Below are positions 15,226 to 62,668 of a DNA stretch of 64,000 nucleotides, in pieces. How positions within the stretch are numbered: the first letter of the stretch is position 1; each line of letters opens with the position of its first letter. This DNA comes from Bugula neritina (taxonomy: Eukaryota; Animalia; Bryozoa): positions 7,101,190-7,165,189 of the forward strand of contig OZ037771.1 of assembly GCA_964035545.1 (NCBI GenBank), written 5' to 3'. A program made the position numbers and the translations under genes. The notes under the pieces were generated by a model. The model was given only the letters and a program-made list of their open reading frames with translations, had not been told where the DNA came from and did no database searches.

Positions 15226-18200
15226 CTAGATTTTGGTAGAAGGTCGTTTTATCATAGGACTATGAGTTGCTCTGTACACTGATGCACTAGGTCGCTGGGT
15301 AGAAACTTTGTTATGAGGAAACAGAGGAGTTTGGGCGTAGAATGAAGATGAAATTGCTATGCTAGATTTGATTTGTTCCTGAGCTATTGCAATGGTTTCT
15401 TCTGCCTTCTTTAGATTTGTACTAAAATACATAAAGAAAGGCATTAACAAAAATGATTAGTGACGTGCTTTATCACATGACAGTACTTCTAGTGACAGAT
15501 AAACATATATATTATTTTCAATGACTCGGCCAACTTGGATTTTGTTACTATATATATGACTGTAAATTTAGACATACTTTTTGCTGCTGTGTGTAAACAC
15601 ATTGTTGATAAAACGTCTAAAAGTTAAATAATAAAACCAATTTGATATGAGTTATTCAACTGAATAACTATAGAGTAGATGTCAATAACAGCAAGTTCAA
15701 AGCTTCTCTAAATACATTAGTAGTGTCTAATATAGCACAATTTCTTTTACACTCTAAAATCAATGGATTCGCTTCAAGTTAACACCATGGCATCAACTCA
15801 CAGTTTTTATAGACTAACATATACGTTGAAAGTCTTATTACATTATATAATGCTACTTTAAACTATGAGGAAATTACCAAATGATTTTATATTTTATGAC
15901 TAGTGAATGATTTGTATTGGGCCTCCATATACCAATAGTATCCTTCTAAATAGTAATATTTAGTACTCACGTGTATTTAAAGCAGAGAGCAGCAGCAATT
16001 AGTAGAATAGATATGGACACACAGCCAAACACTGTGATCAGCAAGGTGTTGGTAGAAAATATTGGAGGCTCTTCTATAACAAGAATAATGGCAGTTGCAA
16101 AAGTTACTCGAGTCATACAAACATTTTAATAATTGCATATTACACTAATGTATAACTATGTATACGACAGCACGACTGTTTCAAAAGTGTTTTTTTGTGG
16201 TGCAGAACAGGGTATACAGTGTAATGTGCGTGTGGCTCGTGTGCATATTCGTGTGTGCTTGCGTGTGTGTGAGTGTGTGTGTGTGTGTGTGTGTGTGTGC
16301 AAGTGTGTGTGTGTGTGTGTGTGTGTGTGTGTGTGTGTGTGTGTGTGTGTGTGTGTGTGTGTGTGTGTGTGTGTGTGTGTGTGTGTGTGTGTGTGTGTGT
16401 GTGTGTGTGTGTGTGTGTGTGTGTGTGTGTGTGTGTGTGTGTGTGTGTGTGTGTGTGTGTGTGTGTGTGTGTGTGTGTGTGTGTGTGTGTGTGTGTGTGT
16501 GTGTGTGTGTGTGTGTGTGTGTGTGTGTGTGTGTGTGTGTGTGTGTGTGTGTGTGTGTGTGTGTGTGTGTGTGTGTGTGTGTGTGTGTGTGTGTGTGCAA
16601 GTGTGTGTGCGTGAGTGAGTGTGTGTGCAAGTGTGTGTGCGTGAGTGAGTGTGTGTGTGTGTGTGTGTGCGTGTCTGCATGTGTGTGTGCGAGTTTGTGT
16701 GTGCGAGTTTGTGTGTGCGAGTGTGTGTGCGCGAGTGTGTGTGTGTTTACATATATGTAAGACATTAGAGATATTATTTAAAAATTTACCAGGAACAACG
16801 CAAGTTGACCTTTCTATCCATTCTCCATAATCAGAACATTCCCATGAAGCATCTGCCTCAACATCAAAGCCTTCTAACAGAACCAGTTTGAGCTGTATGT
16901 CACATTTAAGTCTGTAACCTTTCCTTGGTTTGTAATGCCGCAGACTGAAGCCCTCAGAGTTGAGGATGGTGCCGTTTACATTATCAGGAGGCTCACAGTA
17001 TCGTTCTGAACAAAAGGTTATAAGTACAAAATTTATTTAAATCTTATGTGTTATTTGATAACATAATATATATATAGTATATTACACTATCATAATATGA
17101 TATATCAACTATTATACTATAATATTATATTATTGCTTGCAAAATGCTCATTAAAAGCAACACTATCTTCAACATGTCTTCTGAAATATTTTTAGAATTG
17201 ATAACCTAACAAATATTTTTTGAAGATTTTGTTGCTTTAAAGAAATTGAAAAATTGACAGATACTGCTTGTAACACAAAACATACTTGATTTTACAATAT
17301 TAATTACAGCAACCCACTACTTTTCTGATTAAATCTCAATAACACTATATTTATGTTAAAACGCAGTATAATGCTGCTAAATTTTGTTTGTATTTGATTT
17401 GATCTTACTCTTTCAATATCTCAAACTTCCCACTAACATCTTTAAAGGCTTTTGTAAAAAATATAGGCACATCATTTTATTTCATTTTGTATAAATTAAT
17501 GTTTTTGTAAAATAAAAATAATTTACCATAAAATTTATGAAAATCAATATGAGAAAAGATAAAGCGTAGCCGATAAAAATGTGAATATATTAAACTGTAT
17601 ACGTGCGTTATTATACCAATGTTAATAATAGTACAAAATTAAGTCAAAATGCACATGTTTAAGTATTCAAAACATGTAAAAAATGACCAGTATATGTTAC
17701 TAAACTATTATACATACATAGATCTTGCTGCTTACCAACTGTAAAAAGCGCTGCTTCACTATATGAACTATCTACTCCATTCGACTGACAGAAAGCATAT
17801 GCTACATAATCTCCATTGCCAAAGTTTGGTTGAATAGTGAGTTCAAGAGGTAAGTCCTCCTCAGCAATCTTCTTTTCAAAAACACACGTGGCATCATCAT
17901 CTTTGAAGCAAACCCGAAAAATTACTGCATCCTGTCTTCCACCCGTATTGTATGACCAACCAAAGGTTTTGTTTTCAGATGCTGGATTAGATTTAAGCTT
18001 TAATTTCTCCGGGGGAGCGGGAGCTGTGATTAGTTGTTAATCCAATATGATTACATATCATACATGTGTAAACTGCTTTCTAAATAAAAGTTATTCTGAA
18101 ATATTTTAAAGTTATTGTTCACTCTAAAAATCACTTATAAACAACAATTGTAATCACTTTAAAAAAACTGCAAACTTCAAAAAATTCTAAGCTTGACTCT

Positions 18201-62668: not shown

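What the first reader, a model, noticed from the sequence alone, without database searches (positions are those of the whole stretch)
15226..62668. Tandem cluster of three paralogous Sushi-array receptors with an unfamiliar (CCP)n-(FN3)4-CCP-TM architecture: candidate recognition/immune receptor family
Seen: three genes (A -, B +, C -) contain 34 CCP exons in total and share a distinctive membrane-proximal CCP and a TM exon ending in phase 2. They differ in ectodomain length (>=9, 5 and >=17 array CCPs), in presence of the FN3 block, and in their tails. A and C have matching exon sizes in the FN3/TM block (294/294, 138/138, 288/288, TM 103/103) and conserved motifs ([21 protein letters not shown]; [21 protein letters not shown]), while the array CCPs are much more divergent. 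Established: clustered CCP-array genes occur in the vertebrate RCA complement-regulator and selectin loci, and a Sushi domain is present in the Botryllus allorecognition receptor fester. I do not recognise this domain order as a named family. Inference: a lineage-specific expanding family of adhesion, complement-regulatory or self/non-self receptors.
Basis: partly seen in the sequence, partly recalled or inferred. Interest (0 to 1): 0.85.

Follow-up and report, generated by a model that had tools for sequence, protein, structure and literature searches.

The report
Bryozoan Sushi-array membrane receptor gene family
Three neighbouring genes encode long cell-surface proteins made of Sushi and fibronectin-type modules; they belong to an undescribed family of at least 19 genes in a bryozoan genome, and they evolve conservatively, as adhesion or recognition receptors do, not as fast-changing self/non-self markers.

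Summary
The window has 34 Sushi (CCP) exons in three genes: A on the minus strand with 9 array CCPs, B on the plus strand with 5, and C on the minus strand with 17. Each gene adds one membrane-proximal CCP and a transmembrane exon that ends in phase 2.

Three corrections:
- **FN3 block.** Pfam finds no fn3 in it. The two single-exon domains, D1 and D4, fold as FN3 (pLDDT 91 and 88; Z about 11). The two split domains, D2 and D3, are FN3 only by inference.
- **Family size.** There are 14 genes over 225 kb here and at least 5 on another contig, with 0 to 18 array CCPs. Three members, including B, lack the FN3 block.
- **Array CCP type.** All array CCPs have six cysteines; the proximal CCP has four.

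No RNA run was available. Contigs from a diverged lineage (dS about 0.3) keep exon length, frame and AG/GT sites in every tested exon but one. dN/dS is 0.03-0.49, and 0.10 for C's four N-terminal CCPs.

This supports real, conserved type I adhesion or recognition receptors and argues against a hypervariable allorecognition system. A profile search of 1.84 billion proteins found no full-length relative. The genes are a new variant of a known kind, of moderate interest. The scan has not reported this family on other DNA.

The parts
15226..15421 (-). Gene A: predicted cytoplasmic tail exon. It has a phase-2 acceptor and runs to the stop codon. About 64 aa, no Pfam domain. The C-terminus fits a class I PDZ-ligand pattern (S/T-x-hydrophobic).
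   Evidence: The phase matches the TM exon. No RNA and no orthologue check for this exon.
15971..16073 (-). Gene A: transmembrane exon, 103 nt, phase 1 to phase 2.
16790..17005 (-). Gene A: membrane-proximal CCP with four cysteines, 216 nt, phase 1-1.
17736..18023 (-). Gene A: D4, an FN3-fold domain in one 288-nt exon. It carries the conserved KTFGWS-type motif and an extra cysteine pair.
18797..19398 (-). Gene A: D3 in two exons, 19204-19398 (195 nt) and 18797-18934 (138 nt). FN3-like by size, phase and motif only.
19777..20403 (-). Gene A: D2 in two exons, 20255-20403 (149 nt, phase 1 to 0) and 19777-19909 (133 nt, phase 0 to 1). FN3-like by inference.
20815..21108 (-). Gene A: D1, an FN3-fold domain in one 294-nt exon.
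21534..27526 (-). Gene A: array of 9 six-cysteine CCP exons (189-204 nt, phase 1-1).
30510..34862 (+). Gene B: array of 5 six-cysteine CCP exons. The first may instead start at an in-frame ATG at 30449 that precedes a hydrophobic leader.
35666..35860 (+). Gene B: membrane-proximal four-cysteine CCP (195 nt). It directly follows the array, with no FN3 block.
37687..37795 (+). Gene B: transmembrane exon (about 109 nt, ends in phase 2).
38660..39764 (+). Gene B: one long tail exon (about 367 aa, low complexity, several YxxL/I motifs, no Pfam domain). It stays open in the diverged lineage.
   Evidence: 1105 versus 1108 nt, no stops, dN/dS 0.44
42484..42718 (-). Gene C: first tail exon with a phase-2 acceptor at 42718. 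The 3' end was not determined.
43453..43555 (-). Gene C: transmembrane exon, 103 nt, phase 1 to phase 2.
43923..44126 (-). Gene C: membrane-proximal four-cysteine CCP (204 nt).
   Evidence: The other lineage's single contig has a 72-nt in-frame deletion here.
45163..49876 (-). Gene C: FN3 block. D4 45163-45450, D3b 45764-45901, D3a 46178-46369, D2b 47848-47983, D2a 48852-49003, D1 49583-49876.
50437..62668 (-). Gene C: array of 17 six-cysteine CCP exons (189-204 nt). Exons alternate 192 and 198 nt from CCP7 to CCP16.

Best explanation
A, B and C are three old paralogues of a bryozoan family of at least 19 type I membrane glycoproteins.

The common plan is: signal peptide; a rod of six-cysteine CCP modules (0 to 18 per gene); four FN3-type domains; one four-cysteine CCP next to the membrane; a single transmembrane helix; and a divergent cytoplasmic tail that is probably disordered. 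B and two other members lack the FN3 domains.

Shown here: the exons, their phases, the CCP and FN3 folds, the family size, and purifying selection.

Inferred: the proteins act as long-reach cell-surface adhesion or recognition receptors with germline-fixed specificities. The CCP modules would bind the ligand, as in CR1, CR2, DAF and factor H. Array length plus the FN3 stalk would set how far the binding end stands from the membrane, as the CCP number does in selectins. The different tails would couple each paralogue to different intracellular partners.
For: - **Domains.** CCP exons are confirmed by Pfam and PDB profiles.
- **FN3 folds.** D4 and D1 fold as seven-strand FN3 sandwiches. D4 has pLDDT 87.7 and all top Foldseek hits are FN3. 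D1 has pLDDT 91.3 and Z about 11 at rmsd 2.4 over 92-94 of 98 residues.
- **Membrane anchor.** A hydrophobic TM frame follows the proximal CCP in all 14 genes of this contig. In 11 of them (B and C after manual checks) the exon resolves as phase 1 to phase 2.
- **Tails.** A, B and C each have a tail exon with a phase-2 acceptor.
- **Family map.**
- **Comparative support for the gene models.** In contigs of a diverged lineage all 26 tested exons but one keep length, frame and AG/GT sites, while introns are 73-82% identical with many indels. dN/dS is 0.03-0.49. Young paralogue pairs also give dN/dS below 1 in every exon.
- **Other domains.** None was found on the gene strands, and no lectin or CUB exon lies in the clusters.
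- **Parallel with selectins.** CCP number differs between paralogues (2, 6, 9), serves as a spacer, and the tails are unrelated (PMC6527602).
Against: - There is no RNA evidence. The only run that holds the stretch is DNA.
- Signal-peptide exons are only guessed. C's candidate is poorly conserved.
- D2 and D3 were not folded, because that would need joined exons.
- No ligand, expression site or signalling motif is established. The tails carry only generic YxxL/I motifs.
- The function is argued from architecture and selection pattern alone.
Confidence: 0.6

Rival explanations
1. Membrane-bound complement regulators or receptors, like CD46, CD55, CR1 and CR2. The CCP arrays would bind C3-like thioester proteins deposited on cells and either protect self tissue or mediate uptake.
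For: The array profile's best PDB matches are CR2, CR1, factor H, DAF and MASP. The genome holds roughly five thioester-protein loci. Clustered CCP genes with variable CCP number are typical of the vertebrate RCA locus (general knowledge).
Against: The matches are generic for any CCP. Array CCPs carry an extra cysteine pair at positions that are not cysteine in the CR2, CR1 and beta2-GPI alignments. An FN3 block is unknown in RCA proteins. A search for the anaphylatoxin domain, which marks true C3, gave nothing but was uninformative.
Confidence: 0.12
2. Developmental or neuronal adhesion organisers, like Sez6, CSMD, LEV-9 or Hikaru genki. The CCP proteins would position or cluster other surface receptors or bind matrix.
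For: Strong purifying selection along the whole ectodomain and old, stable paralogues fit conserved endogenous partners. FN3 plus CCP is an adhesion-type module mix. A's tail ends in a PDZ-ligand-like tripeptide.
Against: A family of 19 or more genes, with 0-18 CCPs and some recent tandem copies, is larger and more plastic than known organiser families. No CUB domain is present. There are no expression data.
Confidence: 0.12
3. Polymorphic self/non-self (allorecognition or kin recognition) or rapidly diversifying immune receptors. This is the first reader's favoured reading, by analogy with Botryllus fester and Ciona vCRL1.
For: Clustered multigene family; variable domain number; unrelated tails; patchy synonymous divergence between exons of young pairs, which suggests exon exchange. 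The N-terminal CCP is the most diverged module in the G/H, K/L and I/J pairs. A polymorphic CCP receptor has been proposed as an individuality marker in Ciona (PMC5465252).
Against: dN/dS is 0.10 for C's CCP1-4 and at most 0.49 for any exon between lineages at dS about 0.3. No indel or copy-number change occurs in the covered CCP exons. In young pairs the N-terminal divergence is matched by higher dS, not higher dN/dS. Five of six listed exonic variants in a DNA run are synonymous.
Confidence: 0.07
4. Decaying or non-functional exon arrays, meaning pseudogenes or prediction artefacts.
For: No RNA support was available. One orthologous proximal-CCP exon carries a 72-nt deletion that removes a conserved cysteine and the tryptophan.
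Against: All exons are open, splice sites are canonical and conserved between lineages, and dN/dS is well below 1 everywhere.
Confidence: 0.02

Closest known systems
Selectins (L-, E-, P-selectin) and Drosophila furrowed
   Same: Type I membrane proteins whose paralogues differ in the number of CCP modules, which act as a spacer. The cytoplasmic tails are unrelated between paralogues (PMC6527602). From memory, and not tested here, selectin CCPs also have six cysteines.
   Different: No C-type lectin or EGF exon lies in the loci. There are four FN3 domains and a distinct proximal CCP. The family has 19 or more genes, not three.
RCA-cluster proteins (CR1, CR2, CD46, CD55, factor H)
   Same: Clustered genes, one CCP per phase 1-1 exon, arrays of variable length, and best sequence matches in the PDB. 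B-type members are CCP-only up to the TM helix.
   Different: Array modules have six cysteines. Most members have an FN3 stalk. No link to complement has been shown.
Ciona vCRL1 and Botryllus fester
   Same: Invertebrate CCP-containing membrane proteins proposed for individuality or allorecognition (PMC5465252; PMC3549757, listed).
   Different: Those are highly polymorphic. Here the tested exons are conserved, with dN/dS about 0.1.
SNED1, SVEP1 and CSMD (vertebrate CCP mosaic proteins)
   Same: CCP modules combined with other extracellular modules. SNED1 combines a CCP with FN3 domains (own knowledge).
   Different: No CUB exon in either cluster. NIDO, EGF, VWA and pentraxin were tested only by Pfam scans of the larger unassigned frames in A, B and C, which found none. 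The order CCPn-FN3x4-CCP-TM is not theirs. This is a tandem family, not a one-to-one orthologue.
CUB-Sushi receptor clusters of the same genome (earlier notes s1-456699 and s1-456700)
   Same: Same organism; clustered CCP-bearing type I receptors with swapped tails.
   Different: Different loci and architecture (CUB-CUB-CCP2-4). Those notes report positive selection. This family shows none in the tests made here.

Membership tests
Sushi/CCP/SCR module (Pfam PF00084) | About 60 residues with four framework cysteines and a conserved tryptophan; matches the curated profile. | tested here: met
   Pfam Sushi matches 26 of the 35 aligned sequences, the 34 exons plus one uncounted hit, and 10 of 14 proximal CCPs across the family. 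Profiles hit only CCP proteins in the PDB.
Sushi/CCP/SCR module (Pfam PF00084) | One module per exon with phase 1 at both ends. | tested here: met
   All 31 array exons measure 189-204 nt with AG and GT in phase 1. The sites are conserved in another lineage.
Fibronectin type III domain | Match to the curated sequence profile (Pfam fn3). | tested here: not met
   No fn3 hit at E up to 1 for any block exon.
Fibronectin type III domain | Seven-strand beta sandwich superposable on solved FN3 domains. | tested here: met
   True for D4 and D1 only. D4: TM about 0.7, all top hits FN3. D1: Z about 11, rmsd 2.4 over 92-94 of 98 residues.
Fibronectin type III domain | The same fold for D2 and D3, to justify 'four FN3'. 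| tested here: inconclusive
The only signals are weak in-register profile matches: D2a to the D4 N-terminus (E 0.007-0.01) and D3b to the D1 C-terminus (E 0.025).
Selectins | N-terminal C-type lectin domain followed by an EGF domain. | tested here: not met
   None of 121 Lectin_C hits in the genome lies in either cluster. Other open frames on the gene strands have no Pfam domain.
CSMD / Sez6 type | CUB domains alternating with CCPs. | tested here: not met
   None of 149 CUB hits lies in either cluster.
RCA complement regulators and receptors | Ectodomain made only of four-cysteine CCPs. | tested here: not met
   Array CCPs have six cysteines. A and C carry an FN3 block.
RCA complement regulators and receptors | Binding or regulation of C3b/C4b-type proteins. 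| not testable with these tools
   Thioester-protein genes exist in the genome. Nothing links them to this family.
Polymorphic allorecognition receptors (fester, vCRL1, Alr type) | Elevated non-synonymous change or hypervariability in the recognition domains. | tested here: not met
   dN/dS is 0.10 for C's CCP1-4, 0.14 for CCP11-17 and 0.12 for the FN3 block between lineages. Five of six listed variants are synonymous. CCP5-10 of C and the arrays of A and B were not covered.

The most novel reading that the evidence does not exclude
The family is a receptor class specific to bryozoans, or to a wider lophotrochozoan group: lectin-less selectin-like rods. Array length (0-18 CCPs) and tail type would together encode a set of fixed recognition specificities. 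Candidate targets are microbial partners, such as the vertically transmitted symbiont of this animal, or conspecific larvae and colony tissue. The divergent D4-like fragments found in other samples would then be its members in other species.
Probability: 0.1. Interest if true: 0.75.

Novelty: new variant of a known kind. Interest (0 to 1): 0.4.

Why it matters
Almost nothing is known about bryozoan cell-surface recognition molecules. Bryozoans are colonial and fuse or reject, some species settle next to kin, and this species carries a heritable symbiont.

A well-delimited family of at least 19 genes with a new module order now has exon-level models checked against a second lineage. This gives concrete candidates for expression and binding studies.

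The negative result is just as useful. These genes do not evolve like allorecognition loci, so a search for bryozoan histocompatibility genes should look elsewhere, or at the untested parts of this family. The family also shows that the CCP-number-as-spacer design of selectins has an independent counterpart built without a lectin head.

Tried and rejected
- **RNA support.** The run search returned one run of unrecorded type. When laid on 5,601 bases it proved to be DNA, with contigs across introns, two haplotypes and no splice joints.
- **Full-length relatives.** The profile search gave only fragments and bacterial repeat proteins. The word-index search is length-limited. It found nothing for C's CCP1 frame, and a metagenome scan with that exon also failed.
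- **Walking along C's array.** Contigs of the other lineage stop just upstream of CCP11, so CCP5-10 are untested.
- **Six-cysteine CCPs.** A single CCP exon against the PDB gives only generic CCP matches and no special closeness to selectins. The literature search gave no usable statement on six-cysteine CCPs.
- **Complement.** The ANATO search was uninformative.
- **D2 and D3.** Profile comparison with D1 and D4 is too weak to decide.
- **Extra CCP hit.** The hit at 29020-29199(-) was rejected as a degenerate or chance match.
- **Cytokine-receptor reading of D1.** I did not pursue it. The top fold hits include such receptors, but fibronectin, CDO and LAR FN3 domains score equally well.
- I repeated the step by coordinates.
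Full report
**Material.** The window is G000:C7:7101190-7165189. It is AT-rich (about 30% G+C) with long microsatellites. 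Earlier notes of this scan name the genome as the bryozoan Bugula neritina. I did not verify that name.

**Observation: CCP exons.** Stop-to-stop frames with the CCP cysteine pattern line the minus strand at 21.5-27.5 kb (gene A), the plus strand at 30.4-34.9 kb (gene B) and the minus strand at 50.3-62.7 kb (gene C).
- A profile built from these frames hits 31 array CCPs (9, 5 and 17) and three membrane-proximal CCPs.
- Pfam Sushi matches 26 of the 35 aligned sequences, which are the 34 exons plus one hit I do not count.
- The array profile hits CR2, CR1, factor H, MASP-1, DAF and E-selectin in the PDB.
- The proximal-CCP profile hits factor H, C1r and MASP CCPs at E 1.7e-7, and 10 of 14 family members match Pfam Sushi.
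- Each array exon has AG and GT in phase 1 and measures 189-204 nt.
- All array modules have six cysteines with near-fixed spacing, C-x14/15-C-x10-C-x3-C-x14-C-x14-C. The proximal CCPs have the usual four.
- In alignments to CR2, CR1 and beta2-glycoprotein I, the extra pair faces non-cysteine positions.
- That selectin and SVEP1 modules also have six cysteines is my recollection, not a test.

**The non-CCP block.** A and C share six colinear exons between the array and the proximal CCP.
- The boundaries give four units of 94-111 residues, each starting and ending in phase 1:
  - D1: one exon, 294 nt in both genes.
  - D2: two exons, 149+133 nt in A and 152+136 nt in C.
  - D3: two exons, 195+138 nt in A and 192+138 nt in C.
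  - D4: one exon, 288 nt in both genes.
- Pfam finds no fn3 in any of them.
- With alignments of 11 paralogues, D4 folds as a seven-strand sandwich (pLDDT 87.7). All its top Foldseek matches are FN3 domains: titin, irisin, Robo3, PTP-delta and cytokine receptors, at TM about 0.7.
- D1 folds with pLDDT 91.3. It matches FN3 domains of IL-7R, IL-23R, CDO, EpoR and fibronectin, with Z about 11 at rmsd 2.4 over 92-94 of 98 residues.
- D2 and D3 are split by an intron. For D2 and D3 there are only weak in-register profile matches, plus FN3-like size, phase and motifs. 'Four FN3' is therefore half shown and half inferred.

**Membrane anchor and tails.**
- A hydrophobic frame follows the proximal CCP in all 14 genes mapped on this contig.
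- In 11 of them the exon resolves as phase 1 to phase 2, B and C after manual checks. It is 103 nt in A and C and about 109 nt in B.
- A, B and C each have a downstream frame with a strong phase-2 acceptor. The frame opens with a loosely similar charged stretch and then diverges.
- B's tail is a single exon of about 367 residues and low complexity. None of the tails has a Pfam domain.
- Signal-peptide exons are only candidates.

**Size of the family.**
- Searches of the window's own genome find 16 copies of D4, 15 of D1 and 19 of the proximal CCP.
- Profile mapping of 264 kb around the window gives 14 genes between window coordinates 15 kb and 242 kb. Their array CCP counts are 9, 5, 17, 16, 18, 9, 7, 6, 3, 3, 3, 3, 1 and 0. 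The second, seventh and eighth genes lack the FN3 block.
- Five more genes lie on contig C9 with a period of about 10.5 kb and near-identical D4 exons. I could not fetch that cluster.

**Age and selection.**
- Array CCPs are typically only 30-50% identical, both within and between genes.
- A versus C is saturated at synonymous sites.
- Three young pairs (G/H, K/L, I/J) have dN/dS of 0.14-0.77 in every exon.
- Their dS varies from 0.15 to 1.7 between exons of one pair. That patchiness points to exon exchange or conversion.
- The greater divergence of their N-terminal CCPs goes with higher dS, not higher dN/dS.

**Independent check of the gene models.** No RNA run holds the stretch. The single run returned is DNA.
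- Six exonic differences are listed for that run in C's stalk. Five are synonymous in my frames and one is Ile to Val.
- Exon-sized proteins found in the big searches led to contigs of JGI sample 3300002729 and two Logan runs. These are syntenic with C, with B's tail and with part of A.
- The contigs come from a lineage at dS of about 0.3. Introns are 73-82% identical with many indels.
- I tested 26 predicted exons:
  - C: CCP1-4, CCP11-17, D1-D4 (six exons), the proximal CCP, the TM exon and the first tail exon.
  - B: the tail exon.
  - A: D2b, D3a, D3b and D4.
- Twenty-five of them keep frame and AG/GT sites and have no stop. Twenty-four keep their exact length. B's tail differs by one codon.
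- dN/dS is 0.03-0.49. Pooled values are 0.10 for CCP1-4, 0.14 for CCP11-17 and 0.12 for the FN3 block.
- The exception is C's proximal CCP. On that one contig it lacks 72 nt in frame, including the tryptophan and the third cysteine.

**Relatives elsewhere.**
- A D4 profile scored against 1.84 billion representatives gives 20 hits.
- Ten are exon-sized frames 80-97% identical to copies in this genome.
- Five are exon-sized frames only 28-36% identical. The two that were fetched lie on short contigs of 36-37% G+C, probably from other species.
- The five remaining hits are long proteins, and Pfam shows them to be bacterial-type repeat proteins.
- No lectin or CUB exon lies in either cluster.
- No paper in the library describes the family.

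**Interpretation.**
- The anatomy is that of long type I adhesion or recognition receptors.
- CCP arrays are both binding surfaces (complement receptors) and spacers (selectins, PMC6527602). Here the length ranges from none to 18 modules on a constant stalk.
- Strong purifying selection along the whole tested ectodomain fits fixed ligands. It speaks against the polymorphic self/non-self reading, whose models are fester and vCRL1 (PMC5465252).
- A complement-regulatory role stays open. Thioester proteins exist, but nothing ties them to these genes.

**Verdict.**
- This is a new variant of a known kind, of moderate interest.

Noticed in passing
window 13118-14608 (-): A 497-codon open frame with a CCHC zinc knuckle and a retroviral-type aspartyl protease (Pfam). 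It is a gag-protease piece of an LTR retroelement just downstream of gene A. Observed only.
   Followed up: no
window 46816-47376 (intron of gene C): A very high-copy repeat (summed contig depth up to about 500,000 in the DNA run). One haplotype of that run skips 46967-47328. The diverged lineage's contig lacks 46979-47321. It looks like a recent mobile-element insertion.
   Followed up: partly
window 18238-18650 (intron of gene A between D3b and D4): A repeat of about 410 nt that is absent from the orthologous contig L055. Copies are present at other places in contigs L047 and L054, so it is probably a small mobile element.
   Followed up: partly
L047:7090-7330 / L051:10060-10300 versus window 43939-44011: The other lineage's copy of C's proximal CCP exon lacks 72 nt in frame, which removes the conserved Trp and third Cys. 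It was seen on a single metagenome contig, so it may be real or an assembly fault.
   Followed up: partly
window 50816-58520 (gene C, CCP7-CCP16): Exon sizes alternate 192 and 198 nt. The 192-nt modules often carry a Trp in the extra-disulfide loop and are slightly more alike (35.5% versus 30.7%). This hints at old growth by duplication of a two-module unit. A similar pattern occurs in genes D and F.
   Followed up: partly
window-based coordinates 146.9-176.2 kb, 180.5-200.2 kb, 204.6-222.5 kb (loci L033-L040): In the young pairs G/H, I/J and K/L, dS differs up to eightfold between exons of one pair. This suggests exon exchange or patchy gene conversion within the cluster.
   Followed up: partly
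G000:C9:9652000-9698000: A second cluster of at least five family members with a period of about 10.5 kb. Four have near-identical D4 exons, which marks a recent tandem amplification. It could not be fetched.
   Followed up: partly
window 7474-8175 (-) and 9034-9975 (-): Two large open frames of another gene. One has a signal-like leader and a cysteine-bearing ectodomain, the other a TM helix. It is possibly a further paralogue of the receptors with an 8-cysteine ectodomain noted just left of the window (s1-449207, s1-449208).
   Followed up: no
window 5352-5920, 16251-16746, 25461-25926, 36486-36768, 58608-58751: Long microsatellites: (AC)284, a GT-rich array of about 500 nt inside A's intron between the proximal CCP and the TM exon, (CACT)n twice, and (AT)141.
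   Followed up: no
G000:C2:29935000-30040000: A tandem array of near-identical C-type lectin exons with a period of about 9 kb and at least ten copies on each strand pattern. Seen in the lectin control search.
   Followed up: no
G000:C5:4957000-4996000 and C4:10334000-10362000: Dense runs of dozens of CUB exons, which are very large CUB-repeat genes or clusters. Seen in the CUB control search.
   Followed up: no
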